Part shown: piece by piece, positions 16,072 through 63,317 of the stretch
Layout of the letters: each line of letters begins with the position of its first letter
Position numbering within the stretch: the first letter of the stretch is position 1
IMG/VR virus record: IMGVR_UViG_3300022868_000009
Span: 248,001-312,000 of that record
DNA length: 64,000 nt
Strand: one strand, 5' to 3'
Notes under the pieces: model-generated
What the model saw: only the letters and a program-made list of their open reading frames with translations
Told to the model about the DNA's origin: nothing
The model's database searches: none
Position numbers and translations under genes: made by a program

Positions 16072-16078
16072 ACAAGAA

Positions 16079-16102: not shown

Positions 16103-16105
16103 ATA

Positions 16106-16471: not shown

Positions 16472-16505
16472 AATCGTTTTTTTTTTGTTGTCATTTGACA
16501 TATAT

Positions 16506-17126: not shown

Positions 17127-17171
17127 AATAACAATTATTATTTTTTCTTTTACTTATATATAAAAGTTAAA

Positions 17172-17230
17172 AATTCATTTTTTTAATTCAATACTATATA
17201 TAAAATTCGATTACCTAAAATTTTTAAACT
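17172..17230 (+). repeat. 59-bp direct repeat, copy 1
   Basis: aattcatttttttaattcaatactatatataaaattcgattacctaaaatttttaaact, identical to 18006-18064. Confidence 0.9.
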
Positions 17231-44158: not shown

Positions 44159-44764
44159 ATGAGAAACCTTAAAACATATGAAGATTATTTATATGAATAT
44201 TCTGAAATTAAAAAAGAAGAAACACTACACATATACACAGATGGTAGTTATTCTGACCAAGTTTCAAATTATAAAATAAGTTATAGTGCAGTTTTAATAA
44301 CAGAAAACGAAAACGAATATTATCTTTCAGGACATATGGTTAGAAAATATGTTGATCAATTATTTGGTTCTCAAACACCATTAAATAGTTTAACTGCTGA
44401 ATTAGTGGCTTTAAATCAACTACTTTATATTATGAATAGCTATAAAATATCTAATAAAAATCTTCTAATTTATACAGATTGTGAATCTGTTTACGAACAC
44501 TTCAATGAATCTTTGCCTGTAATAAAGAAAAAAAATATGTCTAAATTAGTCAATAATATAAAACATAATATTAACAATTTAAAAAATAAAAAAAATATCG
44601 TTGATATTAGATGGATTCCAGGACATAAACAAATATACGGTAATATGATAGCAAACTATCTAGCCAAAAAAGGTGAAGATATCAACACTTTTAAAATATA
44701 TTTTAATATGGCAGATAGACATTTTAAAAATATGAAAGACTACGATTGGTTCAAAAAACTTTAA
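44159..44764 (+). CDS. rnhA: Ribonuclease HI with CTS-like leader (MRNLKTYEDYLYE)
   Basis: IYTDGS, AEL.A, IYTDC, WIPGH...GN..A..LAK; the last catalytic Asp appears as N. Confidence 0.8.
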   Translation: MRNLKTYEDYLYEYSEIKKEETLHIYTDGSYSDQVSNYKISYSAVLITENENEYYLSGHMVRKYVDQLFGSQTPLNSLTAELVALNQLLYIMNSYKISNKNLLIYTDCESVYEHFNESLPVIKKKNMSKLVNNIKHNINNLKNKKNIVDIRWIPGHKQIYGNMIANYLAKKGEDINTFKIYFNMADRHFKNMKDYDWFKKL

Positions 44765-50768: not shown

Positions 50769-51842
50769 CTAAGAAACTACATACTTATATAACTTCTTGT
50801 GATAGTCAAGATCCTTATAATCACTAACCATCAAATAAACTATATAACAAAAATAAAATATTTTATCAATCATCAAACTTCTATCAACATCACCACCAAC
50901 AAACCTAAATTCAACATAATCATCATCAATAATTCTTCTTAAATTCATACCGAAAGTTTTAGAACCTAGATTATTAGATAATTCCTTTAATTCGATTTCC
51001 AAAAACTTCTCAACATCATCTACAAAATTATCACTACTAAACTCAGGAAACTCACCCTTCTTTATCTTATCTAAAAATGTCTGACAATATGCAGTAAATT
51101 GTCTATATTCAATATCTTTATAAATATAGGGTTTTTCACTAGTCTCAACCATCATAATTAAACCCTTTACAAAATTCCATCTATCTACATCTTTATTTAA
51201 ACCAATATTAATATGAATAGAAGTGTGATTATTCATATACCAATAATCCTGTTTATTAAAATCATCATAAAAATCATTAATCATTTCTAAACCTTTATCC
51301 AAACCAGTCACATATTTCTTAGGTGAAAATTCAACCCCCCTAGATAAAGTTTGATCAAACTCAAATTTTAAATCATCATAATATTTAGTATAAAAATTAG
51401 GCAAATATTCACCAATTTTATTTATAACATATCCAAGATTTTCAAATTCATCTTCTTCCTCTTCCTCATATTCAATTTCTAAATTATCAATAATATTAAT
51501 CATATTAGAAACTATATATTCCTCTGTCTTATTCTTACAACTATTCATAATATTATCCAAAGAATCAGATATATTTCCAAAATCAAACTGATTATAAACT
51601 ATCTGTTTTAAAAAATCTAAATCATAATCAATTTTATCAATGTCTAATCCAACACGTAATTTTTTAAATATTTCTAATAAATACTTATCCTCTACTTTAG
51701 AAACTTTAACATTCTCATCATCTGTTTCTAATTCAAATTCAAAAGCTAATGTAAAATGTTCTACCATACCAGAATCAAATAATAATTTCTTATCTTTTCT
51801 ATTAAATTCTAGTAATTGTTTATATGTTATAAGATATTTCAT
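50769..51842 (-). CDS. Putative amidoligase (COOH-NH2 ligase type 2) with CTS-like leader
   Basis: FEFELE, EFSP, TSIHINIG, VEFR; leader MKYLITYKQLLE. Confidence 0.75.
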   Translation of the reverse strand: MKYLITYKQLLEFNRKDKKLLFDSGMVEHFTLAFEFELETDDENVKVSKVEDKYLLEIFKKLRVGLDIDKIDYDLDFLKQIVYNQFDFGNISDSLDNIMNSCKNKTEEYIVSNMINIIDNLEIEYEEEEEDEFENLGYVINKIGEYLPNFYTKYYDDLKFEFDQTLSRGVEFSPKKYVTGLDKGLEMINDFYDDFNKQDYWYMNNHTSIHINIGLNKDVDRWNFVKGLIMMVETSEKPYIYKDIEYRQFTAYCQTFLDKIKKGEFPEFSSDNFVDDVEKFLEIELKELSNNLGSKTFGMNLRRIIDDDYVEFRFVGGDVDRSLMIDKIFYFCYIVYLMVSDYKDLDYHKKLYKYVVS

Positions 51843-51878
51843 TTCAACTTTATATATTAAAAATTAATATATACTAGT

Positions 51879-52271
51879 ATGAAAAATTTTTTAAATTTTA
51901 TAAATAATAATCACGAATATTCAAATAATGAAATGAATAAAATTATTAAATTCATTGGCAAATTATGTAAATATGAAAACAAAAAAGCAAACGCAATATT
52001 CAATTTTAACATATCAAAAAATATACTTAATGATACAGATTTTAATGCATCAGTAAGATCAAATAACATATATTCAAACGATATAAAACAAGTTACAAAA
52101 ATACTTGATAAAGTATGCGAAAAATTAAATATGTATCCAACAATAAATATTATGATTAATACATTTGGTAGATCAACAAATTATAATATTAACTGTACAT
52201 TTGAATTTACAGAAAAAAATAAATTAGACATTCTTGCAACTATAGAAGGAAATAAATTAGGACTATTATAA
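51879..52271 (+). CDS. Small dual-tag protein (leader-like N-terminus, ...EGNKLGLL)
   Basis: Terminal motifs. Confidence 0.7.
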   Translation: MKNFLNFINNNHEYSNNEMNKIIKFIGKLCKYENKKANAIFNFNISKNILNDTDFNASVRSNNIYSNDIKQVTKILDKVCEKLNMYPTINIMINTFGRSTNYNINCTFEFTEKNKLDILATIEGNKLGLL

Positions 52272-52616
52272 ATGAAACATCTTAAAAAATATAACGAAGA
52301 GAAAATAGAAAATAAATGGAAAAATACAATAGTAATTTATGAATCTTACTCGGATTCATGGGTATATGTAGATGGTTCATTGATATCAGAATGGTCTGTT
52401 ACCATATTTGATATATTATTAATATTATCAGAGGATAATGTTAATATATTGAAATATAAAATATCAATGTTAACAGATCATTTTCCTCAAAATATAATTG
52501 ATCATTTAAACGATCACCCAGAACAAGAATTTCCAATGTATGATTTAGATATATATGAACAAGAAATAATAAAAAGAAAAGCAGAAAAAGAAGGACAAAA
52601 AATGGGTCTGTTTTAA
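52272..52616 (+). CDS. Small dual-tag protein (MKHLKKYNEE ... EGQKMGLF)
   Basis: Terminal motifs. Confidence 0.75.
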   Translation: MKHLKKYNEEKIENKWKNTIVIYESYSDSWVYVDGSLISEWSVTIFDILLILSEDNVNILKYKISMLTDHFPQNIIDHLNDHPEQEFPMYDLDIYEQEIIKRKAEKEGQKMGLF

Positions 52617-52617
52617 A

Positions 52618-52941
52618 ATGAAACATATTTCAACATATAACGAATACTTACAAACACCCTTAAATTTATCAATACCAATATAGAAGATAATGATAAATTT
52701 ACAAATTACCTAGAACAATCAAACCTAATATCAAAAAATTCTTTATTTAGAACATATCATAAAGGATGTATATATCATACATTTTTAATATCAATTATAG
52801 ATAATCATTCTTAAAAATTAGTTGTTCAAACCCAGATAATGTATCTGGGTTTGAACAAAAAGGAGTAAATGAAATATTATTTGATCCAGATATAATTATA
52901 TAATTATAAGATTAGAAGCAAATAAAATGGGATTATTATGA
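52618..52941 (+). pseudogene. Disrupted dual-tag gene (MKHISTYNE ... RLEANKMGLL)
   Basis: Both terminal motifs intact, but internal stops and frameshifts; contains a perfect 17-bp inverted repeat. Confidence 0.7.
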
Positions 52942-53219
52942 AATATTTAAAGACATACAACGAATCAAAATATAAACCATCATATACTGCACGCCCAATG
53001 CCAGATAAATATCGGCTTAGATGTGAATATTTAATAGATAAATACGGTAAACTAAATACAAATAATAAAATTACACATTTATCAGAAGAATCAGAAATTT
53101 TACAAATAGATATAAATGATGATTATAGATTAGATATTTTTAAAACTACTGATAAATCGTTACTTAATATGAGAGAATTAGAAATGAAATTACAAGCAAA
53201 AGAATTAGGATTGTTATAG
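52938..53219 (+). CDS. Small dual-tag protein (MKYLKTYNE ... QAKELGLL)
   Basis: Terminal motifs. Confidence 0.75.
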   Translation: MKYLKTYNESKYKPSYTARPMPDKYRLRCEYLIDKYGKLNTNNKITHLSEESEILQIDINDDYRLDIFKTTDKSLLNMRELEMKLQAKELGLL

Positions 53220-53281
53220 ATTTAATGAAAAGGGGAATTTATATTATAATATATTTAATGTATCATAATTTAGCACCTTTT

Positions 53282-53667
53282 TTATAATAATCCCATTTGA
53301 TTTGCCTGTTTAACATTATCGAGTGATATACCAACATTTTTTTCTAACCAATTTTCAATTGTAATATAATTGTATTTTTTATAATCAGGATCTTGTAAAT
53401 TATTTTGTAAATATACCATACTACCCCCAATTAAAATCATAATCTTTAACATTAAATATTTCATAATTTTCTTGAGAAATAGATATCAGAAAATAACTAG
53501 GTCTACCACCAGAATAACGAAAAATATAATCATAATCTATATCAATATTATAAAAATCATCATATAATGAAAATAATACAAAATTAATACATAATATATG
53601 TATACATAATATTAAAACAGATGATATAAAATTATTAGAAAAAATATGTTGTTTTAAGGTATTTTAT
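53282..53667 (-). pseudogene. Decayed dual-tag gene; the residual ORF 53282-53464 ends QANQMGLL
   Basis: ATA-AAA-TAC-CTT-AAA-ACA (ATG>ATA, KYLKT) overlaps the upstream stop; frameshifts in between. Confidence 0.55.
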
Positions 53668-54050
53668 AACAATCCCATTTTTTTCGCAGTTAATATTTTT
53701 TCTATTTCAGAACCTAATAAAAATGCATTTAATTTTATGAGTATAGAATTATCTAAATCATCATATTGTACATTTCTTTCATATTCACTATCTGATAAAT
53801 TATAATAATAAATAATACCGGTTGTATTAATATTACTTTGATAAATGTCAAATTTTAAATCATCTAATTTTATTTTTATTAAATTAGTAGATGTAGATCT
53901 ACCATAAAGATCAGATATTCTATTATTACCATCATTATTTTTTTCACCGTATTTATCTAGTAAATATAAACACCTATTAAATACTTTATCAGGCATTAAA
54001 TAACAATGATTTCTATTAATTTTTTCTAAATATGATTTCAAATATCTCAT
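53664..54050 (-). CDS. Small dual-tag protein (MRYLKSYLE ... TAKKMGLL), paralogue of 52938-53219
   Basis: Shared MPDK...RC.YL.DKYG core. Confidence 0.75.
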   Translation of the reverse strand: MRYLKSYLEKINRNHCYLMPDKVFNRCLYLLDKYGEKNNDGNNRISDLYGRSTSTNLIKIKLDDLKFDIYQSNINTTGIIYYYNLSDSEYERNVQYDDLDNSILIKLNAFLLGSEIEKILTAKKMGLL

Positions 54051-54091
54051 TAATCTTATATATTAAATTTAAATAAGAATATATAAATAAT

Positions 54092-54394
54092 ATGAAATAC
54101 CTTAAAACATATAATGAAAATAAATCATTTAATGATAAAGTTAATATGATTAAAAAAATAGTAGACACCGTTGGTAAAACTGATGATAGAGGTAAAATTT
54201 TAAATTTAAACTATAAATCAAAAGGTTCTAAAACCTATCTTTTAAAAATTCAAGATACATGCTGGATAAGTATTGAGATGATAGGTACAAGATTTTTAAG
54301 AAATTTAGATTCTAGAGTAATTGAATCTATATATAAAGAATTAAAAGAAAAATACCCAGAGTTTTTTATGGGAGATAAATTAGGTATTTTATAA
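54092..54394 (+). CDS. Small dual-tag protein (MKYLKTYNE ... MGDKLGIL)
   Basis: Terminal motifs. Confidence 0.75.
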   Translation: MKYLKTYNENKSFNDKVNMIKKIVDTVGKTDDRGKILNLNYKSKGSKTYLLKIQDTCWISIEMIGTRFLRNLDSRVIESIYKELKEKYPEFFMGDKLGIL

Positions 54395-54900: not shown

Positions 54901-54905
54901 TTCCT

Positions 54906-54913
54906 TATCTTTG
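54906..54913 (+). promoter_or_regulatory. Bacteroidota-type -7 element TATCTTTG
   Basis: TAnnTTTG preceded by ttcct, as in the other copies. Confidence 0.65.
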
Positions 54914-54936
54914 TAATGAATAAAAATTATAATGAG

Positions 54937-55488
54937 ATGGAAAATTATTTTAAAATTGAACATGGAAGAAAGGTTGAGACATACACACCTAAAGATACAT
55001 ATGTATTAACATGGAATGAAAGACATGGTGATGCTGATCAAAGTATGCCTACATCTATGACTATACACAGTATGGATGAGTTATGGTTCATGTTATGGTT
55101 TAGTAAGTGGTTAGATAGATACAGACAGTATAGTGACTTAGATGAGTATAGTAAGGTACTTAATAAGTATAGTAAGGAGTTATTGGGTAGTAGTTGGTAT
55201 ATAACTGATTGGTGTAGTGATGTGTATGATCATGATTGTATATATTCTAGTTGTTATTGTGGTGTGGATGCCATGAAGTTATATTATTATGATGAGCATG
55301 GTGTTAAGTATGAAGAGGAGATTGATGGTAGTACATATATATCTTTAGTGAAGATGGGATATAAGTTAGATTGTTGGTTCATTGATAAGTATCCACATAT
55401 AGCTAATGAGTTACAGGGTATGATATGTGATGCTGCATTGGAAGATAAGAAGGATGTTATTGAGGCTAATAAAATGGGGTTGATATGA
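54937..55488 (+). CDS. Early protein with C-terminal EANKMGLI tag; related to 59584-60093
   Basis: GDAD and LYYYDEHGVK motifs; start placed downstream of the promoter (54916 also possible). Confidence 0.7.
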   Translation: MENYFKIEHGRKVETYTPKDTYVLTWNERHGDADQSMPTSMTIHSMDELWFMLWFSKWLDRYRQYSDLDEYSKVLNKYSKELLGSSWYITDWCSDVYDHDCIYSSCYCGVDAMKLYYYDEHGVKYEEEIDGSTYISLVKMGYKLDCWFIDKYPHIANELQGMICDAALEDKKDVIEANKMGLI

Positions 55489-55817
55489 TAGATAAGAATA
55501 TAGTTATAGTATCGTATAGTAAAGAGGAGTTTAATTATGTATTGAATCTATTTAAATCTAGGGAGTTCAGTAGGTCTACGATTGATTCGTATCTACGTTA
55601 CGTTAATGATGATGGTCATTATAATGATTATGTATATCCTATTGCATTAATTGTGAGGTTTAAATTAATGTCAGCAACGTGGCAGTATAAAGATATGTGG
55701 GATCATATTAATGATTTATTAGATAGGGGTGAGGTTGATAGTGTTATTGATTGTAAAGATTTCAAAGAGATGGGTGGTGATAATTATATTGAAGGTATTA
55801 AATTAGGTTTACTTTAA
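55485..55817 (+). CDS. Small tag protein (...EGIKLGLL)
   Basis: C-terminal motif. Confidence 0.75.
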   Translation: MIDKNIVIVSYSKEEFNYVLNLFKSREFSRSTIDSYLRYVNDDGHYNDYVYPIALIVRFKLMSATWQYKDMWDHINDLLDRGEVDSVIDCKDFKEMGGDNYIEGIKLGLL

Positions 55818-55846
55818 AGTTTAGAAGGTATTCCTTATCTTTGTAT
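55815..55846 (+). promoter_or_regulatory. Repeated early promoter taaagtttagaaggtattccttatctttgtat
   Basis: Near-identical copies at 58048, 58798 and 63287; contains TATCTTTG. Confidence 0.75.
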
Positions 55847-55889
55847 TGAATATAATTTAAAGAATAGAAAATGATAAAAGGAATAAGTA

Positions 55890-56207
55890 ATGACATATAA
55901 GGTATTGATTAAGGTTCGTAATGAATCTGAATGGATATCATGTTGTGATATGTTGTATAGTCATGGTTATCGATGGCAAGACAATTGTATGGACTCAAAG
56001 AAGATACATGGATATAAGTTGATAAGTGAAGGTGATATATATTTAGTTATATATAATCATACTGACCCTCATCATCATGATGATCGTTTATTTTATAATA
56101 CTAATGTTAATGTTGATATTTATGGGCCGGATGTTATTATAATTAATTATGTTGAAGGTATGGATTTACATGAGATAATAGAAGTTAATAAATTGGGATT
56201 AATATGA
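55890..56207 (+). CDS. Small tag protein (...EVNKLGLI)
   Basis: KVRNESEW.SCC.MLYSHGY.W core. Confidence 0.75.
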   Translation: MTYKVLIKVRNESEWISCCDMLYSHGYRWQDNCMDSKKIHGYKLISEGDIYLVIYNHTDPHHHDDRLFYNTNVNVDIYGPDVIIINYVEGMDLHEIIEVNKLGLI

Positions 56208-56539
56208 TAGTATTTAGTAAAGATATAAAGAAAATAAATATTAAGGTTCGTAATGAATCTGAATGGGTATCATGTTGCAATATGTTGTATAGTCATGGTT
56301 ATCATTGGAATGTTGAGTCTGATTTTATGGAGATATATTCTGAATGTTTAGAAACTGCTAAGGAATATATTAAGACTTATGCAATAAATGATGGTATATA
56401 TTTAGTTGTTTATAATGATAATAGTGGACGGTTATATTATAATTATAAATATAAGACTGATGGTATAATAAATCTTGATTGGTATGATGGTATGGATTTA
56501 CATGAGATAAATGAAGCTAATAAATTGGGGTTAATATGA
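56204..56539 (+). CDS. Small tag protein (...EANKLGLI); recent paralogue of 55890-56207
   Basis: Near-identical DNA over the KVRNESEW...GY segment and the GMDLHEI tail. Confidence 0.75.
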   Translation: MIVFSKDIKKINIKVRNESEWVSCCNMLYSHGYHWNVESDFMEIYSECLETAKEYIKTYAINDGIYLVVYNDNSGRLYYNYKYKTDGIINLDWYDGMDLHEINEANKLGLI

Positions 56540-56841
56540 AAGAGAAGATATACATAATATTAAATAATATAGATGATTGGATTAATTGTTGTAATCAATT
56601 AGACAATGAGGGATATTTTTGGGCAAGAAGTAGTGACTCATATAAAGATAAATATCATAAATGTAAAACTTTCGGTAATCCTGAAAATTATATAGTAATA
56701 GGTCATAATGAGTATGATGATAATCGTTTATATTATGGTAATATATATAATGATAAGAAGTTTGATGGTATTATTTTATATTGGGATGCTGATGTAGATT
56801 TAGAAAGTTATTTTGCAGGTTTAAAAATGGGATTATTATAA
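56536..56841 (+). CDS. Small tag protein (...AGLKMGLL)
   Basis: CC.QL..EGYFW core plus tag. Confidence 0.75.
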   Translation: MKEKIYIILNNIDDWINCCNQLDNEGYFWARSSDSYKDKYHKCKTFGNPENYIVIGHNEYDDNRLYYGNIYNDKKFDGIILYWDADVDLESYFAGLKMGLL

Positions 56842-56951
56842 TAATATTTTCATGTTTGACCAGGGAGAATTTAGGTTGGAGGAAAGGGGATATTTTTATT
56901 TGGTGAAGGTTTGTTGTGTATTTGTGTATAAATTAAAATGTAAAAAAGATT

Positions 56952-57332
56952 ATGATAAAATGGATTAATATAAGGCTGGAAGGTTATGGTAAAGGTAAAG
57001 GTAAAGGTAAAGGTAAGAAGAAACTGAATAAGATGGTTATGCGTAAATTGTTACATCAAATTGATTGTAAGGTTGGTTTTCGTATTAAGGATGGTGGATG
57101 GAAACCAGTTTTAAATAGTTTAAAAGAATATAAGCATTATAAATATATATGGATTGCTATATGTCCTTTTGGTAAAGATATGGCTGCGGATTATCATGAA
57201 AATAAAGAAGAATGGGAGAGTTATAAAGACGGTATTGAGGCGGATGAAGCTGAGGTATGGTTGAGTTGGGAAGAGTTTATGGATTTAGATATTCAGATGA
57301 TTGTTAATGGTTCTAAAATGAATTTATTATGA
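56952..57332 (+). CDS. Small tag protein (...NGSKMNLL) with a (GK)5 microsatellite
   Basis: ggtaaa repeats at ~56988-57017. Confidence 0.7.
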   Translation: MIKWINIRLEGYGKGKGKGKGKKKLNKMVMRKLLHQIDCKVGFRIKDGGWKPVLNSLKEYKHYKYIWIAICPFGKDMAADYHENKEEWESYKDGIEADEAEVWLSWEEFMDLDIQMIVNGSKMNLL

Positions 57333-57721
57333 AAGATATAAAGTGGATAAATATAATGTTAGACTGGGATAAGTTTAAGTGGGAACAATTCCATGATGTT
57401 GTTGATTATTATAAAGAGTTATTTCCTAAATTAGATTGGACAACTGTTCAAACTGAGATACAGATACATGATAAAATTCGAAATGAATCTGTTTTTGATA
57501 TTTTAGGTTTATCTATATGTTTGGAACATGATAGTAATGATTTTAATATTAATAATTGTGAAAATACTATAAATAATTGGCATCCTGTTATATTTAAGTA
57601 TGGTATTGGTGATGATTTATATGACAAGCAAACTGGTATTGAAATAATTGTTAAATATAGTAAAGATTTCCGTGAAGAGATTGAGTTTTATTTAGAGGGT
57701 TCTAAAATGGGTTTATTATGA
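57329..57721 (+). CDS. Small tag protein (...EGSKMGLL)
   Basis: C-terminal motif; IKWINI shared with the previous gene. Confidence 0.75.
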   Translation: MKDIKWINIMLDWDKFKWEQFHDVVDYYKELFPKLDWTTVQTEIQIHDKIRNESVFDILGLSICLEHDSNDFNINNCENTINNWHPVIFKYGIGDDLYDKQTGIEIIVKYSKDFREEIEFYLEGSKMGLL

Positions 57722-58050
57722 AAAAAACAATAATATTTTTACATAACAATAAGGATTTGGGCAACTTGTTCATGTATTTACATGTTATTGGATGCAAATG
57801 GTCTAGTGGTAGACCTATTATAATAGATAGTGAAATACAAAGATTTAATTTATCTTGTTCTAGATCTAAATCTGTTGCAATTATCGTTGATGATGGTAGT
57901 CTTACTTATGTATCAAATAAGAAAGATATTGTTTATAGTTATATATCTGGTGATAAATTTAAATATTATGATCATTATGAGTATGTAGATTTTGATAAGG
58001 AGTTTGATATTGATGTAACTATTAATGGTAATAAGATGGGATTACTTTAA
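57718..58050 (+). CDS. Small tag protein (...NGNKMGLL)
   Basis: YLH.IG.KW...YDHYEY core. Confidence 0.75.
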   Translation: MKKTIIFLHNNKDLGNLFMYLHVIGCKWSSGRPIIIDSEIQRFNLSCSRSKSVAIIVDDGSLTYVSNKKDIVYSYISGDKFKYYDHYEYVDFDKEFDIDVTINGNKMGLL

Positions 58051-58080
58051 AGTTTAGAAGGTATTCCGTGTCTTTGTATT
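58048..58080 (+). promoter_or_regulatory. Repeated early promoter copy (TGTCTTTG variant)
   Basis: taaagtttagaaggtattccgtgtctttgtatt. Confidence 0.65.
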
Positions 58081-58102
58081 ATAATTAAAGGAGGAAACAA
58101 AA

Positions 58103-58438
58103 ATGAAAATGATAATATATGCACATAATGACGAAGATATTTATAAGTTATCAACTTATTTACATTATATTGGAATTAAATGGCAAACTGAAATTTTTAT
58201 TATGAATGATGGTGAAATGACAATAGATTGTAATAGAGCTGAATCTAAATCTATTGCATTTTGTGTTAAAAATAATCGTGTGTCATATATGAATGATGGT
58301 GGTTCTTTTGGTGGTGATGTTTATAATTTTTTCAAAAGGCAACCATATGAATGTTATGACCATTATGAGTATATTGAATTTGATAAGGAGTTTGGTGTTG
58401 ATATGGTTTTAGAATCAATAAAGATGGGTTTATTATGA
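58103..58438 (+). CDS. Small tag protein (...ESIKMGLL)
   Basis: Paralogue of 57718 and 58435; AAGGAGG upstream. Confidence 0.75.
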   Translation: MKMIIYAHNDEDIYKLSTYLHYIGIKWQTEIFIMNDGEMTIDCNRAESKSIAFCVKNNRVSYMNDGGSFGGDVYNFFKRQPYECYDHYEYIEFDKEFGVDMVLESIKMGLL

Positions 58439-58800
58439 AAAAAACAATAATATATGTACATAGTGATGAGGATATGATTAATTTATTAAGTTATTTACAT
58501 TTTGTTGGAGTTACATGGCATGGCTCTGCTATTATAAAAGATGATGATAGTTCCGATAATTTTTTTAATGCCGATGCCAGATATATAGATATTAGTTGTA
58601 AAAAAACGGGAACTGTTGGATTTTGTATTGATCAAGATGATTATATTACATATATGGATGATGGTACTTTTAAAGGCGAGAATGTTTATGAATATTTCGG
58701 TAGAGATTTTATGGAGTATGATCATTATGAGTATGATGAATATGTTGAAAAGTTTGATATTGAACCACTCATAAATGGAATAAAGATGGGTTTACTTTAA
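58435..58800 (+). CDS. Small tag protein (...NGIKMGLL)
   Basis: Paralogue of 57718 and 58103. Confidence 0.75.
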   Translation: MKKTIIYVHSDEDMINLLSYLHFVGVTWHGSAIIKDDDSSDNFFNADARYIDISCKKTGTVGFCIDQDDYITYMDDGTFKGENVYEYFGRDFMEYDHYEYDEYVEKFDIEPLINGIKMGLL

Positions 58801-58830
58801 AGTTTAGAAGGTATTCCGTATCTTTGTATT
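58798..58830 (+). promoter_or_regulatory. Repeated early promoter copy
   Basis: taaagtttagaaggtattccgtatctttgtatt. Confidence 0.75.
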
Positions 58831-58852
58831 ATAATTAAAAAGGAGAAGAAAA

Positions 58853-59107
58853 ATGAAAAAGAAACAAAATAAAAAAGAAGAGAGTAAATATCAATACAGA
58901 AGTGATACTGCTGTTAGGGTTGAAGAAACTGAATATAGTGTAAATGAGTATGACGAATGGGATCGCATAGTATTTTATTTATGGAAGAAGAGTGGTTATT
59001 GGTCTGTGAATGTTTTTGCTCCTGTAACTGATGGTAAAAGGGTTTCATTAGAACCTTTACAAGTAATTCATAAGTATTGGACATCTTATAATAAATTATC
59101 AATATGA
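58853..59107 (+). CDS. Hypothetical early protein
   Basis: Behind a promoter and AGGAG. Confidence 0.6.
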   Translation: MKKKQNKKEESKYQYRSDTAVRVEETEYSVNEYDEWDRIVFYLWKKSGYWSVNVFAPVTDGKRVSLEPLQVIHKYWTSYNKLSI

Positions 59108-59370
59108 AAAGATTAAATATATTTGTAAGAAGTGGATTACAGCAAACGTTGTTTCTACATTATTTATATACTAATGGTTATAGTTATAAAGATAGAAAGG
59201 ATCTTTATTGGAAATTTACTAATGGTTCAGGTGCTATTGTGGTTAATGTAATTGATAAAATAATATTAGGTGGTAACACAGGTTGGTTTGCAACACAATC
59301 ACATATGAATGTAAAAGAATTTGTTGATAAGGCGTGGGAATTTGAAAGTATGAGGATTGGTGTATTATGA
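59104..59370 (+). CDS. Small tag protein, divergent tag (...ESMRIGVL)
   Basis: LY.NGY core plus tag variant. Confidence 0.65.
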   Translation: MKRLNIFVRSGLQQTLFLHYLYTNGYSYKDRKDLYWKFTNGSGAIVVNVIDKIILGGNTGWFATQSHMNVKEFVDKAWEFESMRIGVL

Positions 59371-59414
59371 TTAAGGAATATCATATATGTATTATAAATA
59401 AAAAGGAGAAAAAA

Positions 59415-59606
59415 ATGCTAACAATATTAACAATATTATTAATATGGAATCAATTTAGTGGTTGGTTTAGAAAGATGTTTTGTAAAATTGGTTTACACAC
59501 ATGGATTAAAGTCTATTCACATAATGAAAAAGGTTGGCATATAAAGGAAAAGAAATGTAGAATATGTAATAAGGAGGTAAAAAATGATAAAAATAATAGA
59601 AAATAA
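59415..59606 (+). CDS. Small protein with C-x3-H...C-x2-C motif (DUF1660-like)
   Basis: FCKIGLHTW...CRIC; AGGAG before ATG 59415. Confidence 0.55.
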   Translation: MLTILTILLIWNQFSGWFRKMFCKIGLHTWIKVYSHNEKGWHIKEKKCRICNKEVKNDKNNRK

Positions 59607-60093
59607 AACACAAACTAAAAGAATTGAACCTTATTATAGGTTAAAATTTAGTTACATGATTGGTGATGCTGATGGTGACACTACAGAGAAGATTGATATT
59701 CCTCTTAACAATCCATATGTCGAAAGAGTTGTTGATGTTTTAAATAATTGTGATACACCTAAAGGTCATTGGGGTATGATATTAGACTCTGAACATTTCA
59801 CTAAGTTATTGAATCAGGGTAAAATGACACAGAGTGATTATAATTTTTGTAAAGTGGTTGTATTTGGTGATGACATTGATGAACACATGGAAGAGTTTTT
59901 CAGCAAGGAAAGAATTGAGGCTGACAAATTAAAATTATTGGAGATAACTGGCGATGAAAAATCATACGCTTATGAATTTGAAGAGGCTTGTATTACTTCG
60001 ATTGGACATAGTTTCGCAGTTTTTGAAGGTATTGATTTATATTATATTGATGAATATGGAGTAAAACATGAGACCAAAATAGTTGATGATTAA
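59584..60093 (+). CDS. Early protein related to 54937-55488 but lacking the tag
   Basis: IGDADG, LYYIDEYGVKHE. Confidence 0.7.
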   Translation: MIKIIENKTQTKRIEPYYRLKFSYMIGDADGDTTEKIDIPLNNPYVERVVDVLNNCDTPKGHWGMILDSEHFTKLLNQGKMTQSDYNFCKVVVFGDDIDEHMEEFFSKERIEADKLKLLEITGDEKSYAYEFEEACITSIGHSFAVFEGIDLYYIDEYGVKHETKIVDD

Positions 60094-60110
60094 AACATTA
60101 AAATGGTAAG

Positions 60111-60140
60111 GAATTTCAGAAGGAGTTCCTTATCTTTGTA
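60111..60140 (+). promoter_or_regulatory. Early promoter copy
   Basis: tttcagaaggagttccttatctttgta. Confidence 0.65.
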
Positions 60141-60167
60141 TTAATATTAATTTAAAGAAGAAATAAA

Positions 60168-60395
60168 ATGATAAAATATAAAATAACAGATGAAAAAATT
60201 GAAGTAGGCGACATTGTTGCTTATGGAATAACATGGAGAGAGAAACGTGTAAGAAAGCACGGTTATGTACTTGGTGTTTGGGAAGAATATTGGGATGAGG
60301 ATTCACAGAAGTTTAGAAATAAGGTTGAATGTGTTGATAAAGATAATCATATAATTCGTAGTGAAGAATGGTTAAAAAAGGTGGTATTGATATGA
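60168..60395 (+). CDS. Hypothetical early protein
   Basis: 75 aa; IEVGDIV SH3-like start. Confidence 0.55.
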   Translation: MIKYKITDEKIEVGDIVAYGITWREKRVRKHGYVLGVWEEYWDEDSQKFRNKVECVDKDNHIIRSEEWLKKVVLI

Positions 60396-60697
60396 TAAAA
60401 CGATATTATAAAATAGGAATAGATATTCCTGATAATAAATTTGTTAAGTTGATATCAGATCATTTATATTCTTTGGGTTATAAATGGTGTAGTGATTTTA
60501 GAGACGAATCTTTTTATGATAAAGTAACGAATGAATGTATAAGAAGTAATGTGCGTGGTATTGGTGTTGAATGTAATGGTCGCATGAGTTACAATGTTGT
60601 TAAAAATCAAACTGAAAAGTGGTATTCTCTTGAAGAATATGTAATAAAATATGATTTAGTGATTGAATATGAAGGATTAAAAATGGGTTTATTATGA
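60392..60697 (+). CDS. Small tag protein (...EGLKMGLL)
   Basis: LYSLGYKW core; ATGA overlap start at 60392. Confidence 0.75.
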   Translation: MIKRYYKIGIDIPDNKFVKLISDHLYSLGYKWCSDFRDESFYDKVTNECIRSNVRGIGVECNGRMSYNVVKNQTEKWYSLEEYVIKYDLVIEYEGLKMGLL

Positions 60698-60801
60698 GAA
60701 AGAGAAAACGAATCAAGGAAAATATTGACTATTTGTTATTTGGAATGGATTGTGCATTGATAGTATTATTTGTATTATTCATAGTATTAATTATAATTTA
60801 G
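60694..60801 (+). CDS. 35-aa single-pass membrane peptide (below the ORF-track cutoff)
   Basis: MRKRKRIKENIDYLLFGMDCALIVLFVLFIVLIII; ATGA overlap with the upstream gene. Confidence 0.55.
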   Translation: MRKRKRIKENIDYLLFGMDCALIVLFVLFIVLIII

Positions 60802-60810
60802 GAGGAAAAA

Positions 60811-61161
60811 ATGAGAAAAATATATTTAGCAACAAATTATTTCACAGCGTTAACCCCGCTTGATGATGATAACAATTTATTAAAATTAGAAAGAGGTAAA
60901 GATCCTGTTATTATTTGTACCCTTGAGAAATATCTGGAAGATGTTGATAACACAATAATCACAGGTAACATATTAAGATTAGAAATAATTGCAAAAACAG
61001 ATGATGGTTGGATAATTGAACAAGAATTTATAACACCGGGAATGTTAGAGAGTTTGAATTGTAGAAAGATAAGTCTTGACTCACAATTTATTGAAACTTT
61101 AAATCGAAGCCAGAAAGTGGCTTTAGAGTTAAAGAATATAAATGAAAAATTGTCAAGGTAA
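60811..61161 (+). CDS. Hypothetical early protein
   Basis: AGGAGG upstream. Confidence 0.6.
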   Translation: MRKIYLATNYFTALTPLDDDNNLLKLERGKDPVIICTLEKYLEDVDNTIITGNILRLEIIAKTDDGWIIEQEFITPGMLESLNCRKISLDSQFIETLNRSQKVALELKNINEKLSR

Positions 61162-61329
61162 ATTTTTTTATTAAGTAGAATCACCGTATATTTGTATTAT
61201 ACAATTGAGAAGATAGAAAAAGAAGAGAAATAAACAGAATGATTTTTTAATTCAGAATAAAGTTCTTATCTTTGTATAGACAAAAACAAGTAAACATAAT
61301 ATTAATTAATTTAAAAAACGAAAAACAAA

Positions 61330-61644
61330 ATGGCAAACAAAAAAGATTTAACAAACGCAATTGCAATAGCTACAGGCAAAACAAAAAAAGATAGCAAAGA
61401 ATTAGTAAACGTCATAATGGCATCTATTAAATCTGAATTAAGTAACGGTGAAGGTTCTATCGTAAAATTAGTAAACTTTGGAACATTTAAAGTAGTTAAT
61501 CGAAAAGCAAGAAAAGGAAGAAATCCAAGGACTGGTGAATCAATTGATATCCCTGCAAAGAATGTAGTTAGATTCAAAGCTGGTAAAGGTCTTAAAGAAG
61601 CGGTTGATTATACTGCTGAAGAAAGAGAAGAATTAGGAATATAA
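61330..61644 (+). CDS. hup: HU/IHF-family DNA-binding protein
   Basis: NKKDL..AIA...VKLVNFGTFKV..RKARKGRNPRTGE.I.IPAK.VVRFKAGK.LKEAV. Confidence 0.95.
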   Translation: MANKKDLTNAIAIATGKTKKDSKELVNVIMASIKSELSNGEGSIVKLVNFGTFKVVNRKARKGRNPRTGESIDIPAKNVVRFKAGKGLKEAVDYTAEEREELGI

Positions 61645-61667
61645 GAAATAAAACTCCTGAAATATCG

Positions 61668-61694
61668 AAGCCACCTGGAGAGGTGGCTTTTTTT
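61668..61694 (+). terminator. Intrinsic terminator after HU
   Basis: aagccacct-ggag-aggtggctt plus T-tract. Confidence 0.85.
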
Positions 61695-61721
61695 ATTTGA
61701 AAAAATTCCTTATATTTGTAT

Positions 61722-62042
61722 ATGAATAACGAAAAATATATAAGGTTTAAGGTAAAAACTCTATCAGATAGTAAGAGTATTCAAGAATTTTTATTTTCTT
61801 TAGGATATATGTGGTGTTCAGAAAATAGGAAAGAATATTATTATATGAATTTTGAAACGTCTGATATTTTATTATGTCTTGAGAGTGACTTTAATCCTAA
61901 TATAGATCATATTTTTCATGGTGATGTAGAGATATTAAATTATGATAAAAGATGGATGGATAAGATAATAAAATCTTATGATATGAGTAATTATAAAGAT
62001 TTTATTCAATATAAAAATGCAAAACAACTGGGATTAATTTAA
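61722..62042 (+). CDS. Small tag protein (...NAKQLGLI)
   Basis: FKV...SK.IQEFLFSLGY.W core; TATATTTG just upstream. Confidence 0.75.
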   Translation: MNNEKYIRFKVKTLSDSKSIQEFLFSLGYMWCSENRKEYYYMNFETSDILLCLESDFNPNIDHIFHGDVEILNYDKRWMDKIIKSYDMSNYKDFIQYKNAKQLGLI

Positions 62043-62072
62043 TATTAAGAACAAACTCCGTATCTTTACACT

Positions 62073-62378
62073 ATGAAAAAACATGAAAAATTTATATTAT
62101 TTAAGGTTGATACTTCAAGGGAAAGTAAGGAAATTCAAGAATTTTTGTTTTCTTTAGGTTATTCTTGGCGTGGAGATAATAATATGGAATATTTCTCTGT
62201 TGAAATTGGGGCTTATATTTTATTATGTGTTGATAGTAATAATATTAAGAGCAAAAATTGTATTTTTTATGGAAATGATAAAATGCAATATGATCAAGAA
62301 CTTATAAAATCTTATAACATGAATAATTATAAAGATTCTTTATGTTTTATAGAATCATTTAAATTGGGATTATTTTAA
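62073..62378 (+). CDS. Small tag protein (...ESFKLGLF); paralogue of 61722
   Basis: Shared core. Confidence 0.75.
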   Translation: MKKHEKFILFKVDTSRESKEIQEFLFSLGYSWRGDNNMEYFSVEIGAYILLCVDSNNIKSKNCIFYGNDKMQYDQELIKSYNMNNYKDSLCFIESFKLGLF

Positions 62379-62517
62379 AATTGAGAACAAACTCCGTATC
62401 TTTACATAGTTAAAGGGCGGAGAATTTTTATAGGTTCTGGGAGAGTAGACTCCAACTTGCGATATATTTTTTTTAACACAATTTTTATTTCTTAGAAGTA
62501 ATCCGTATCTTTGTTAT

Positions 62518-62949
62518 ATGAAAATGAAAGTATTATATATTAAAGCTGAAAACATGAAAGATGGTGATTTTGACATTATGTTAAAATTTGTTAATAATAA
62601 TAAAAATTTAGATTATTATTTAACAGGTATAAATATGGGGGGTATTATGAGAACATTTATATGTATAGCCGTAAATGATGATAATTATAATGAGGTTAAA
62701 GAAAAATTATTCTCTAAATATAATACACCATCACATATTACTGATTTTCAAAATTATGAAGATTATAAATATCCCTATTTATCAATTGAAATATCAATGG
62801 AAAATGAACATGCAGATCATTTAACTATTCATCCTTTGAATGATGATGATGTAGATGTTAAAAATTTTGAAATAATTTATAGTAATATTGATGACATATT
62901 TGATGATATTGATATGCATATAACTACAAAAAAACTTGGTTTATCTTAA
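62518..62949 (+). CDS. Small tag protein (...TTKKLGLS)
   Basis: Tag variant; TATCTTTG just upstream. Confidence 0.7.
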   Translation: MKMKVLYIKAENMKDGDFDIMLKFVNNNKNLDYYLTGINMGGIMRTFICIAVNDDNYNEVKEKLFSKYNTPSHITDFQNYEDYKYPYLSIEISMENEHADHLTIHPLNDDDVDVKNFEIIYSNIDDIFDDIDMHITTKKLGLS

Positions 62950-62964
62950 CTAAAAAAAATAATT

Positions 62965-63285
62965 ATGAGAAAATTTAATTGTATTAAAATAGAAAATGAA
63001 GAACATTTAAATGAATGTTATAAAAAGATAATTGATCTTAAAACACATTATCCATATAACACTTTTGTTGATAGATTTATTATGATAAAGGGTTATTGTA
63101 TTGGTTTTGAAATAGAAGAAATAGAAGAAGGAAGATTAATTTTAACATTTTTAACTGATAATGATCTTCAACGATTTGATGAATCAAATGAATTAGCTTT
63201 TAATTGTAATTATTTTAATGATATTGATTCTTTTGTTGAATATCATAAGATTTATTTTGATTGTAGATCATTAGGGGTTTTATAA
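62965..63285 (+). CDS. Small tag protein (...DCRSLGVL)
   Basis: Tag variant. Confidence 0.65.
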   Translation: MRKFNCIKIENEEHLNECYKKIIDLKTHYPYNTFVDRFIMIKGYCIGFEIEEIEEGRLILTFLTDNDLQRFDESNELAFNCNYFNDIDSFVEYHKIYFDCRSLGVL

Positions 63286-63286
63286 G

Positions 63287-63317
63287 AAAGTTTAGAAGGT
63301 ATTCCGTATCTTTGTAT
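63287..63317 (+). promoter_or_regulatory. Repeated early promoter copy
   Basis: aaagtttagaaggtattccgtatctttgtat. Confidence 0.75.

What the first reader, a model, noticed from the sequence alone, without database searches (positions are those of the whole stretch)
51879..54394. Dual-tag genes: packaging-like leader plus C-terminal KxGLL tag on the same proteins
Seen: the genes at 51879, 52272, 52938, 53664, 54092 and 13517 (and two pseudogenes) carry both motifs and sit behind late-type TATATA promoters. The 54.9-63.3 kb tag proteins lack the leader and use host-type promoters. 13517-13852 also has a core like the early GY.W family. Inference: the same tag-dependent function is supplied in two waves, pre-made in the capsid at injection and then newly made early, which suggests a modular host-takeover or anti-defence arsenal.
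Basis: inference. Interest (0 to 1): 0.8.

Follow-up and report, generated by a model that had tools for sequence, protein, structure and literature searches.

The report
Phage effector genes with two address tags
A giant phage of Bacteroidota bacteria carries dozens of small, fast-evolving genes that all end in the same nine-residue tail, and some also start with a short leader resembling phage T4's "load me into the capsid" signal. This looks like a modular toolkit for taking over the host, and its shared tail has no described counterpart that I could find.

Summary
In the window, 23 ORFs end in [ILFY]-E-[GAS]-x-K-[ML]-G-L-[LI]-stop (0.007 expected). Five of the six named genes also begin M-[KR]-[YH]-L-K-[TKS]-Y. 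The exception, 51879, has only a degenerate leader. Both motifs are selected at protein level. The tail is restricted to a small lineage: at least 44 copies in about 86 kb of this 348-kb phage, plus sister phages, but 0 of 1,712 genes in 80 relatives. The leader is clade-wide, resembles the T4 capsid-targeting sequence MKTYQEFIAE, and also sits on untagged proteins (RNase HI, and topoisomerase IB in a relative). Relatives carry a T4-type portal, capsid protein and gp21-like protease. In sister phages both signals flank unrelated cores, including ankyrin and LRR repeats. Leader genes lie behind a TTAATATATA motif shared with baseplate and tail genes. Leaderless tagged genes lie behind Bacteroidota-type TAnnTTTG promoters. 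My best reading is a modular effector set. The leader most likely routes proteins into the capsid for injection, and the tail is a common docking peptide of unknown partner. The claim that 13517 has a GY.W-like core is weak.

The parts
51843..51878 (.). Divergent late-type promoter region with two TATATA cores (51851-51856, 51868-51873), between 50769-51842(-) and 51879(+).
   Evidence: TAATATATA is present on both strands. The core lies 28-31 nt before each start codon, the same spacing as at structural genes.
51879..52271 (+). Tagged gene (130 aa, ...IEGNKLGLL) with only a degenerate leader (MKNFLNF). First gene of the + operon.
   Evidence: No Pfam family.
52272..52616 (+). Dual-tag gene (114 aa, MKHLKKYNE...GQKMGLF).
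52618..52940 (+). Decayed dual-tag gene. The leader piece (MKHISTYNEY, 52618-52680) and the tag piece (LEANKMGLL, 52885-52938) share a frame that has many stops between them. The middle is open in other frames. It contains a 17-bp-stem hairpin at 52822-52858.
   Evidence: The pieces were compared separately and match relatives only through leader and tag.
52938..53219 (+). Dual-tag gene (93 aa, MKYLKTYNE...AKELGLL). Its tag is the E-variant that dominates in a sister lineage.
53282..53464 (-). 60-aa ORF with an MKYL start and an NQMGLL end. Possibly the relic of a longer dual-tag gene, since about 200 nt of non-coding DNA lie upstream.
53664..54050 (-). Dual-tag gene (128 aa, MRYLKSYLE...AKKMGLL). 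Paralogue of 52938 and 54092.
   Evidence: (BLASTP 8e-10 to 52938).
54051..54091 (.). Second divergent late-type promoter region (TATATA at 54057-54062 and 54080-54085).
54092..54394 (+). Dual-tag gene (100 aa, MKYLKTYNE...GDKLGIL).
13517..13852 (-). Dual-tag gene (111 aa, MKYLKTYNE...AIKLGLL). Second gene of a TATATA-class operon that runs into large virion genes (9295-12645, 3803-9280).
   Evidence: (78%-identical homologue P0002 keeps both motifs). The AF2 model shows a disordered leader, an alpha/beta core and a C-terminal helix followed by an LGLL coil.
54916..63285 (+). Early array of 16 tag-only genes, with no leaders. The genes are 54916-55488 (start revised from 54856), 55485-55817, 55890-56207, 56204-56539, 56536-56841, 56952-57332, 57329-57721, 57718-58050, 58103-58438, 58435-58800, 59104-59370, 60368-60697, 61722-62042, 62073-62378, 62518-62949 and 62965-63285. 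Untagged genes are interspersed, including an HU-like gene at 61330-61644.
   Evidence: The median pI is 4.9. At least 11 belong to the GY.W family.
54901..63317 (+). Copies of the early promoter element TTCCGTATCTTTGTAT, which contains the Bacteroidota -7 box TAnnTTTG. They lie at 54901, 55831, 58064, 58814, 60126, 61262, 61706, 62392, 62501 and 63302, plus weaker copies at 61182 and about 62055.
   Evidence: (15 matches against 1.45 expected; all those in this range are on the + strand). Four of them abut the ATG, which implies leaderless mRNAs.
44159..44764 (+). Leader-only gene: RNase HI with an MRNLKTYED leader.
   Evidence: (Pfam RNase_H 1.9e-12, residues 22-172).
50769..51842 (-). Leader-only gene (357 aa, MKYLITYKQ), conserved in Mahaphage-type relatives, where the homologue appears to lack the first 8 residues.
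21892..22284 (-). Leader-only gene (130 aa, MKHLMTYES) behind a TATATA-class element.
26038..26499 (-). Leader-only gene (153 aa, MKHLLTYNE), next to tail-fibre-like genes.

Best explanation
The window comes from a roughly 348-kb, 25%-GC jumbo myovirus. It belongs to the Bacteroidota phage clade that includes the 'Mahaphage'-type huge phages, Lak phages and phage PAU.

The finding is one locus of a lineage-specific, modular effector repertoire. Each protein has up to three parts.

1. An optional leader of 8-10 residues, M-K-[YH]-L-K-[TK]-[YF]-[NE]-E. It is disordered in models and is a relative of the T4 capsid-targeting sequence.
2. A variable, fast-turning-over cargo domain. This is a small alpha/beta 'GY.W' domain or other unknown small domains here, and ankyrin or LRR repeats in sister phages.
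3. A constant 9-residue tail, hydrophobic-E-[GAS]-x-K-[ML]-G-L-[LI]-COOH. It is the end of an alpha-helix closed by Gly, followed by two terminal hydrophobic residues.

Shown: the motifs, their protein-level selection, their modularity, their lineage distribution and their link to two promoter classes.

Inferred:
- Leader-bearing genes are late genes. Their products are loaded into the prohead through the scaffold core by the leader and enter the cell with the DNA.
- Leaderless tagged genes are transcribed at once by host sigma-A RNA polymerase.
- The tail is a short docking peptide that plugs all these binding modules into one common partner. They would then act as adaptors or inhibitors during host takeover.

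The partner is unknown. My leading guess is a host AAA+ protease or a similar hub. This is by analogy with adaptor tails such as SspB's and with poxvirus ankyrin/F-box families.
For: Non-randomness and protein-level selection:
- Searches give the chance expectations (0.007 for the tag).
- Searches show synonymous codon variation at most motif positions, and the conservative M/L and L/I alternations need several base changes.

Lineage distribution:
- At least 44 tagged genes lie in three separate regions of the source contig (window, L023, L035).
- Tagged genes also occur in a 166-kb sister phage (L033), a 42-kb contig (L038) and a sister lineage with the tag variant DSxE[LI]GL[LI] (L039, L041, L045).
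- Negative controls: 0 of 20 chance-hit contigs, 0 of 1,712 genes in 80 relatives and no match in 185,579 reference genomes.

Modularity:
- Among 95 leader or tag proteins, 4 carry ankyrin and 2 carry LRR repeats, all with leader and tag.
- In the AF2 model of the LRR protein (pLDDT 90), residues 1-8 are disordered and the tail is a coil after the capping helices. The GY.W-type protein shows the same layout.

Leader as a capsid-targeting signal:
- The T4 CTS is MKTYQEFIAE (PMC8442874). The leader here is MK(YL)KTY[NE]E, and one paralogue starts MKTYEDYIKQ.
- The leader occurs on 54 of 1,712 genes around the head modules of 80 relatives.
- The clade has Portal_T4 (2.7e-57), a Gp23-type capsid protein (1.8e-26) and an ORF just upstream of it that aligns to T4 gp21 with the catalytic His and Ser motifs kept (hhalign E 2.4e-5, probability 76%).
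- Leader genes share the TTAATATATA element and its spacing with baseplate and tail genes. Structural proteins themselves lack the leader, so it is not a general feature of late genes.
- The locus holds a decayed copy, as T4 internal-protein loci do (PMC3012670).

Association:
- Leader and tag co-occur (19/7/43/110, Fisher p=2e-5).
- No leader occurs in any early-promoter operon.
Against: - There is no proteome, transcriptome or binding data, so packaging, timing and tail function are all inferred.
- The head module and protease were shown in relatives, not in the source genome itself.
- The leader ends in aromatic-x-Glu or aromatic-Glu, not the L/I-x-Glu of T4 gp21 sites.
- The leader also heads RNase HI and a winged-helix protein, which are unusual capsid cargo.
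- The basic-pI trend of leader proteins seen in the window fades in the larger set (p=0.06).
- In both models the tail follows a confident helix, so part of its conservation may be structural.
- The Gly codon is biased to GGA (67% against 26% genome-wide), and more so when the next gene overlaps (79% against 56%). This shows an overlaid ribosome-binding role.
- No candidate reader of the tail was identified.
- The operon and promoter classification is a crude heuristic in AT-rich DNA.
Confidence: 0.45

Rival explanations
1. Both ends are assembly propeptides, as in T4 Alt. The leader targets the protein to the prohead core. The tail is a second propeptide, or a safety catch, that the prohead protease removes after the conserved Glu at -8 (hydrophobic-Glu then Gly/Ala/Ser). 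Injected proteins would then lack the tag, and the tag on early proteins would do something else.
For: - The tag logo has [ILFY] at -9, Glu at -8 (31 of 62) and [GAS] at -7 (57 of 62), often with a hydrophobic residue at -10.
- gp21-type proteases cut after Glu in short hydrophobic-x-Glu motifs, and T4 Alt loses both termini (PMC9026906).
- A gp21-like protease is present in the clade.
- Leader and tag are positively associated.
Against: - 43 of 62 tagged genes have no leader, and many sit behind early promoters where no prohead exists.
- Glu at -8 is present in only half of the tags and is replaced by Asp-Ser in the sister lineage.
- The best-conserved residues are the last four, downstream of the proposed cut.
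Confidence: 0.15
2. The tail is a degron. Its non-polar C-terminus marks these proteins for a host protease, so that early and injected effectors are short-lived, or so that they swamp the protease as decoy substrates.
For: - The tail is strictly C-terminal with an exposed hydrophobic end.
- Non-polar C-termini and the ssrA ...LAA tag are known bacterial degradation signals (general knowledge).
- The motif sits on many unrelated proteins.
Against: - The motif is longer and more specific than known non-polar degrons, and it ends in Leu-Leu rather than Ala-Ala.
- It is unclear why more than 40 genes, including ankyrin and LRR binders, would all need to be unstable.
- No data bear on it.
Confidence: 0.15
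3. The tail has no independent function.
For: - The GGA bias at Gly is stronger when the next gene is coupled.
- 38 of 79 tags overlap or abut the next start codon.
- The tail follows a confident helix.
- A distant untagged GY.W homologue, P0024, ends ...KHLGDEN, which suggests that K-x-L-G belongs to the fold.
Against: - 41 of 79 tags have no coupled downstream gene yet keep the motif.
- Codons at the other positions follow genome usage.
- The tag sits on ankyrin, LRR and at least five unrelated small families.
- It is more conserved than any core position (Gly is the only near-invariant column).
- The sister lineage keeps [LI]-G-L-[LI] while changing the rest of the tail.
Confidence: 0.12
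4. The tail is a sliding-clamp-binding motif, of the type Q-L-x-L-F found at the C-terminus of E. coli Pol II. It would tether these proteins to the host or phage clamp.
For: The tail matches in position and in the hydrophobic pattern [ML]-G-L-[LIF]-COOH. Three window tags have Gln just before it (53282, 61722, 52272). The comparison rests on my memory of the consensus.
Against: - The defining Gln is replaced by Lys in 45 of 62 tags and by Glu in the sister lineage.
- None of the replication proteins seen (helicases, topoisomerase II, RNase HI, HU) carries the tail.
- There is no rationale for more than 40 clamp binders.
Confidence: 0.05
5. The leader is not a capsid-targeting signal. It would be another N-terminal signal for a subset of late proteins, such as a translation-initiation context or a stability or localisation signal.
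For: - The leader heads RNase HI, a winged-helix protein and a type IB topoisomerase.
- Codon biases occur at leader positions 5 and 6 (AAG and ACA).
- No cleavage has been shown.
Against: - Other leader positions vary synonymously.
- Structural late genes lack the leader.
- It resembles the T4 CTS closely, including an MKTYEDYI variant.
- DNA-acting enzymes are plausible co-packaged cargo.
Confidence: 0.2

Closest known systems
T4 internal proteins IPI/IPII/IPIII and their capsid-targeting sequence (CTS, MKTYQEFIAE)
   Same: Both have a short N-terminal leader of similar sequence (K-T-Y-[QNE]-E) on otherwise unrelated, fast-evolving small proteins. Both sit in plastic loci with gene decay, and both occur in phages with a T4-type portal, capsid protein and gp21-like protease. 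The T4 proteins are injected anti-restriction and takeover factors (PMC3012670, PMC9026906, PMC8442874).
   Different: The leader here carries an extra Y-L-K and ends aromatic-(x)-Glu rather than I-A-E. It occurs on dozens of genes per genome, including enzymes. Neither packaging nor cleavage is shown. T4 internal proteins have no shared C-terminal tail.
T4 Alt (packaged ADP-ribosyltransferase with N- and C-terminal propeptides)
   Same: It is an injected effector with signals at both ends, both processed by the prohead protease (PMC9026906).
   Different: Alt is a single protein. The tail here is a conserved 9-mer shared by more than 40 genes, most of which have no leader and are probably early.
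Poxvirus ankyrin-repeat / PRANC (F-box-like) multigene families, and bacterial adaptor tails such as the SspB C-terminal ClpX-binding peptide (from my own knowledge)
   Same: The architecture matches: a variable protein-binding module (ankyrin, LRR or a small domain) plus one constant C-terminal element that docks onto a common cellular machine. Both are expanded, rapidly diverging viral paralogue arrays.
   Different: The tail here has only 9 residues and no sequence similarity to either element. No partner is known and no degradation is shown. This is a functional analogy, not membership.
Ejection-protein paralogue families of phiKZ/SPN3US-type giant phages
   Same: These are large sets of head-packaged, protease-processed proteins delivered with the DNA (PMC9026906, PMC5694885).
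   Different: The propeptides there are long and cut at S/A/G-x-E. They have no common terminal 9-mer and no matching early-expressed set.
Bacterial beta-clamp-binding pentapeptide (QL[SD]LF; Pol II ...QLGLF)
   Same: The position is C-terminal and the hydrophobic pattern is [ML]-G-L-[LIF].
   Different: The defining Gln is absent from most copies, and the carriers are not replication proteins.

Membership tests
T4-type CTS-bearing packaged (internal) proteins | An N-terminal leader of about 10 residues similar to MKTYQEFIAE, on unrelated cargo proteins. | tested here: met
   The leader logo from 26 genes is M-K-[YH]-L-K-T-Y-[NE]-E. One paralogue starts MKTYEDYIKQ. The T4 sequence comes from PMC8442874. 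Cargos include unknown small domains, ankyrin, LRR, RNase HI and topoisomerase IB.
T4-type CTS-bearing packaged (internal) proteins | The leader ends in a gp21-type cleavage site (L/I-x-Glu). | tested here: inconclusive
   Glu is at position 8 (10 of 26) or 9 (14 of 26). The residue two or three places before it is Tyr, Phe or Thr, not Leu or Ile. The specificity of this clade's protease is unknown.
T4-type CTS-bearing packaged (internal) proteins | The genome encodes a gp21-family prohead protease with a T4-type portal and capsid protein. | tested here: inconclusive
   This is met in relatives. L034 has Portal_T4 at 2.7e-57 and Gp23 at 1.8e-26. The ORF upstream of the capsid gene gives Pfam S77 only at E 0.005 (below cut-off), but hhalign to T4 gp21 gives E 2.4e-5 with the catalytic His and Ser motifs conserved. 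The head module of the source contig itself was not retrieved.
T4-type CTS-bearing packaged (internal) proteins | The protein is present in virions with the leader removed, and is delivered into the cell. | not testable with these tools
   This needs virion proteomics or terminal mapping. No open proteome of a close relative was found.
Beta-clamp-binding motif proteins | Conserved Gln at motif position 1. | tested here: not met
   Position -5 is Lys in 45 of 62 tags and Gln in 2 of 62. It is Glu in the sister lineage.
Beta-clamp-binding motif proteins | The carriers are replication or repair proteins. | tested here: not met
   Helicases, topoisomerase II, RNase HI, HU and thymidylate synthase in the window lack the tail. 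The C-terminal half of the DNA polymerase was not found.
ssrA-like / non-polar C-terminal degrons | An exposed non-polar C-terminus ending in small residues (...LAA-COOH). | tested here: inconclusive
   The last four residues are [ML]-G-L-[LI] and are coil in both models. They are non-polar but not Ala-Ala. Turnover is not testable here.
Ankyrin/F-box (PRANC)-type viral adaptor families | A C-terminal F-box-like domain of about 30-40 residues. | tested here: not met
   The constant element is 9 residues long and no Pfam family covers it. Only the architecture is alike.
GY.W small-domain family of the early array (membership of 13517) | Profile similarity of the core, excluding the shared tail. 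| tested here: inconclusive
   An HMM built without 13517 and without tails gives no hit at E<=10. hhalign gives E 0.024 and probability 2%, but aligns strand 1, helix 1 and the 'YW' motif in register.
Bacteroidota sigma-A promoters | A -7 box TAnnTTTG with a -33 TTTG about 19 nt upstream. | tested here: inconclusive
   The -7 box is perfect in at least 9 copies. The upstream conserved block (AAAGTTTAGAAGG) has TTTA rather than TTTG, at non-canonical spacing.

The most novel reading that the evidence does not exclude
The C-terminal [ML]-G-L-[LI] tail is a new universal docking peptide. It would turn more than 40 rapidly evolving phage binding modules per genome (GY.W domains, and ankyrin and LRR repeats in sister phages) into adaptors that deliver host defence or housekeeping proteins to one host machine, for example an AAA+ protease. 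This would be a bacterial counterpart of the poxvirus ankyrin/F-box strategy. The adaptors would be deployed in two waves: pre-loaded in the capsid through a T4-like targeting leader, and then made from early promoters.
Probability: 0.15. Interest if true: 0.9.

Novelty: new variant of a known kind. Interest (0 to 1): 0.68.

Why it matters
If the leader is a working capsid-targeting signal, the T4 internal-protein paradigm extends to a whole clade of Bacteroidota jumbo and mega phages. It would then give a simple sequence rule for predicting their injected proteins, which include enzymes such as RNase HI and, in a relative, topoisomerase IB.

The shared tail marks a large set of phage proteins that are otherwise impossible to annotate as one functional class with a single presumed partner. 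Finding that partner would explain dozens of 'hypothetical' early genes at once. It could also reveal a new host-takeover hub in Bacteroidota.

Ankyrin and LRR modules carrying both signals suggest programmable target recognition. That is of interest for phage-host arms-race biology and as a possible protein-delivery or targeting scaffold.

Tried and rejected
- Family and fold searches gave nothing. Pfam and PHROGs on the tagged proteins found no family, apart from ankyrin and LRR in sister phages.
- A profile search of 1.8 billion proteins with the GY.W family returned only 27 hits. All were small unannotated proteins or spurious repeats.
- tblastn of tagged proteins against GenBank phages found nothing.
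- Foldseek of the 13517 model against PDB and BFVD gave no significant match, only weak hits to uncharacterised small phage proteins. The ESM Atlas was also uninformative.
- The idea that the tag is a DNA-level repeat or mobile junction is rejected as the main cause, because of synonymous variation and the uncoupled copies. A ribosome-binding overlay (GGA) is real.
- Plain TATATA as a promoter mark is rejected because it is not enriched. It is replaced by TTAATATATA with fixed spacing.
- The sigma-70 consensus scan shows no enrichment, as expected for this host type.
- PAU gp270, annotated as 'internal capsid protein', has a leader-like start but is not homologous to 50769.
- The C-terminal half of the phage DNA polymerase, wanted for the clamp test, was not found. 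In L033 the gene is split by homing endonucleases.
- There are no tRNA or tmRNA genes and no Rfam families.
- Literature searches for the motifs found nothing relevant.
- A reference-genome scan for the dual-tag junction gave only two chance hits.
No protein read through a stop was handed to any tool. The pseudogene pieces were compared separately.


Full report
**What the window is.** The window has 25% GC and encodes T4-style functions. These include a fused topoisomerase II, helicases, thymidylate synthase, a gp6-like baseplate wedge protein and tail-fibre-like proteins. Its 1,116-aa virion protein is 38% identical to proteins of the 634-735-kb 'uncultured phage' genomes LR756501-4 and LR745206. 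It is more distantly related to Sphingomonas phage PAU, the Lak megaphages, and Tenacibaculum, Chryseobacterium and Flavobacterium phages. The source is IMG/VR contig IMGVR_UViG_3300023257_000007 (348,222 bp), which has a near-identical twin of 344,634 bp.

**The C-terminal tag is real.**
- Twenty-three of 83 called genes end in the motif or a close variant, against 0.007 expected from composition.
- The pentapeptide occurs only once internally in 19,491 residues.
- Pooling 62 tagged genes from five loci gives a 9-residue logo: [ILFY] at -9, Glu at -8 (31), [GAS] at -7 (57), Lys at -5 (45), Met or Leu at -4 (61), Gly at -3 (57), Leu at -2 (56) and Leu or Ile at -1 (55).
- Codons vary synonymously, and at most positions they follow genome-wide usage.
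- The Met/Leu and Leu/Ile alternations are conservative for a protein but not for DNA.
- The exception is Gly, which is 67% GGA against 26% genome-wide. The bias rises to 79% when the next gene overlaps and is 56% when it does not. In coupled arrays the tail therefore also supplies a Shine-Dalgarno-like GGA. However, 41 uncoupled genes keep the motif, so this cannot be its main cause.

**The leader is real and wider than the finding says.**
- M[KR][YH]L.[TKS]Y heads 8 window genes, against 0.001 expected. Looser forms head about 7 more.
- Five of the six named genes have it clearly. 51879 has only MKNFLNF.
- It also heads untagged proteins, including an RNase HI (44159-44764, Pfam 1.9e-12) and a winged-helix protein.
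- Structural proteins behind the same promoter class start MA, MS or MP instead, so the leader is not a general late-gene feature.

**Promoters.**
- Plain TATATA is not enriched.
- TTAATATATA is: 12 of its 15 copies lie in the 8.6% of the window that is intergenic. It sits 27-37 nt before start codons, most often 31. These include the starts of baseplate and tail genes 9295, 26959, 32173 and 40152, and of 50769, 51879, 53664 and 54092.
- The 54.9-63.3 kb array carries at least 10 copies of TTCCGTATCTTTGTAT, all on the + strand. The whole window has 15 copies against 1.45 expected.
- This element contains the Bacteroidota -7 box TAnnTTTG. In four cases it abuts the ATG, which implies leaderless mRNAs. 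One copy lies inside ORF 54856, so that gene most likely starts at 54916.
- By a crude operon classification over nine loci, no tagged gene in an early-promoter operon has a leader (0 of 13). In TATATA-class operons 21 of 34 do (p=1.3e-4).

**Distribution elsewhere.**
- A scan of IMG/VR for one DNA form of the tag found tagged ORFs only in this phage, its twin and one 166-kb phage. Twenty chance-hit contigs had none.
- The source contig has two more clusters outside the window. L023 has 12 tagged genes and L035 has 9 tagged and 7 leader genes. That makes at least 44 tagged genes in about 86 kb examined.
- Scanning for the tag-to-leader junction found a 42-kb contig (L038) and a sister lineage (L039, L041, L045). 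In that lineage the tag reads [LF]-x-D-S-x-E-[LI]-G-L-[LI], and L041 has 11 consecutive dual-tag genes.
- Lys at -5 is therefore dispensable, and the invariant core is [LIM]-G-L-[LI]-COOH.
- Around the capsid genes of 80 more distant relatives (1,712 genes, 26-48% GC) the leader occurs 54 times (typically MKHLRKFEE or MKHLKRFNE) and the tag never does.
- Reference bacterial and archaeal genomes gave only two chance hits.
- In short, the leader is an old, clade-wide signal and the tag is a recent, lineage-restricted one.

**Modularity.**
- Within the window the tagged genes fall into several sequence families. Eleven or more belong to the GY.W family.
- Among 95 leader or tag proteins from all loci, four carry ankyrin repeats (best E 1e-21) and two carry LPX-type leucine-rich repeats (3e-21). 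All six have both leader and tag.
- A type IB topoisomerase (2e-25) and RNase HI have the leader only.
- The AlphaFold2 model of the LRR protein (pLDDT 90) shows residues 1-8 disordered, a regular solenoid and two capping helices ending at Lys, followed by a four-residue coil.
- The model of 13517 (pLDDT 70) shows the same layout: a disordered leader (1-14), a beta-alpha-beta core, a helix at 96-107 and then LGLL.
- No known fold matched.

**Is the leader a capsid-targeting sequence?**
- The T4 CTS is MKTYQEFIAE. It is cut once by gp21, which cleaves after L/I-x-Glu. It is the only conserved part of the otherwise diverse injected internal proteins (PMC8442874, PMC9026906, PMC3012670).
- The leader here shares K-T-Y-[NE]-E, and one paralogue starts MKTYEDYIKQ.
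- In the relative LR745206 the head module is T4-like. It has Portal_T4 (2.7e-57) and a Gp23-type capsid protein (1.8e-26). Directly upstream of the capsid gene is a 707-aa ORF whose N-terminal domain aligns to T4 gp21 with the catalytic His and Ser motifs conserved (GEFDHP and VSSRA here). The scores are hhalign E 2.4e-5 with probability 76%, and Pfam S77 at E 0.005, below cut-off.
- This makes a T4-like loading and processing route plausible for the clade. It does not show it for this phage or these proteins.
- The basic-pI bias of leader proteins in the window is weak in the larger set.

**What the tail does is unknown.**
- Its strict C-terminal position, its exposed hydrophobic end after a helix, its presence on unrelated binding modules and its conservation above any core residue point to a short docking peptide for one shared partner.
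- I favour an adaptor or hub model, by analogy with SspB-type adaptor tails and poxvirus ankyrin/F-box families. This is analogy only.
- The rivals are: an Alt-like C-terminal propeptide cut after Glu at -8, a degron, a purely structural and coupling relic, and a clamp-binding motif. The last is disfavoured because the defining Gln is absent.

**Verdict.** The 'two waves of a modular arsenal' interpretation is a reasonable, partly supported hypothesis. The claim that 13517 has a GY.W-like core is weak. I found no description of either the tail or the dual-signal architecture in the searchable literature.

Noticed in passing
window 54856-55488: The longest ORF starts at 54856, but an early promoter copy (54901-54916) lies inside it. 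The real start is most likely the ATG at 54916 (MNKNYNE...), which would make the mRNA leaderless.
   Followed up: partly
window 61706-61724, about 62055-62075, 62501-62520, 54901-54918: At four early genes the TAnnTTTG box ends 3-4 nt before the ATG, which implies leaderless early mRNAs. Other early genes (58103, 58853, 60811) have strong AGGAGG-like Shine-Dalgarno sequences, which is unusual for a Bacteroidota system.
   Followed up: no
window 62392-62480: An early-type promoter (62392-62407) is followed by no ORF. Instead there is a relatively GC-rich stretch of about 70 nt with a GGAG...CTCC hairpin and a T-run, just before the next promoter. It may be a small early RNA. Rfam has no match.
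   Followed up: partly
window 52822-52858: A perfect 17-bp-stem inverted repeat lies inside the decayed dual-tag gene. It could be a terminator or the footprint of an insertion.
   Followed up: no
window 63339-63800: The last gene behind an early promoter encodes a SprT-like zinc metalloprotease (HEIAH motif, phrog_1006 at 2e-26). It has neither tag nor leader.
   Followed up: no
window 61330-61644; L035 4259-4537: An HU-like DNA-binding protein (phrog_379, 4e-32) sits inside the early array with its own promoter and an intrinsic terminator (about 61672-61697). A second paralogue lies inside another dual-tag cluster of the same genome.
   Followed up: no
window 59584-60093 versus 54916-55488: The untagged gene 59584 is similar to the middle of tagged gene 54916-55488 (BLASTP 37% over 35 residues, E 0.006). 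The tagged gene then continues for about 50 more residues to the tail. This may be a natural tag-plus/tag-minus pair.
   Followed up: no
L038 5436-6821 (-): A type IB topoisomerase (Pfam Topoisom_I, 2.3e-25) carries the MKYLKTYNE leader and no tag. If it is packaged, this would parallel the virion-packaged topoisomerase of poxviruses.
   Followed up: partly
L033 14102-18538: In the 166-kb sister phage the DNA polymerase gene is split. Only the N-terminal half (15703-17172, -) is seen, and it is flanked by two homing/HNH endonuclease genes.
   Followed up: no
L034 31380-33284 (-) and 38506-38895 (+): The Mahaphage-type relative encodes an RNase II/R-family exoribonuclease (RNB, 5e-112) inside its head module and an NFACT-R RNA-binding protein just after the capsid gene. 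In some relatives the protein at this position, just after the capsid gene, carries the leader; its N-terminal sequence resembles the NFACT-R protein but homology was not tested.
   Followed up: no
window 18121-21384: Topoisomerase II is a single 1,087-aa fusion of the parts that T4 encodes separately (phrog_543 plus phrog_551).
   Followed up: no
window 45415-46587: Thymidylate synthase is 390 aa long. The PHROG match spans the whole protein but covers only about 275 profile positions, which suggests a large insertion.
   Followed up: no
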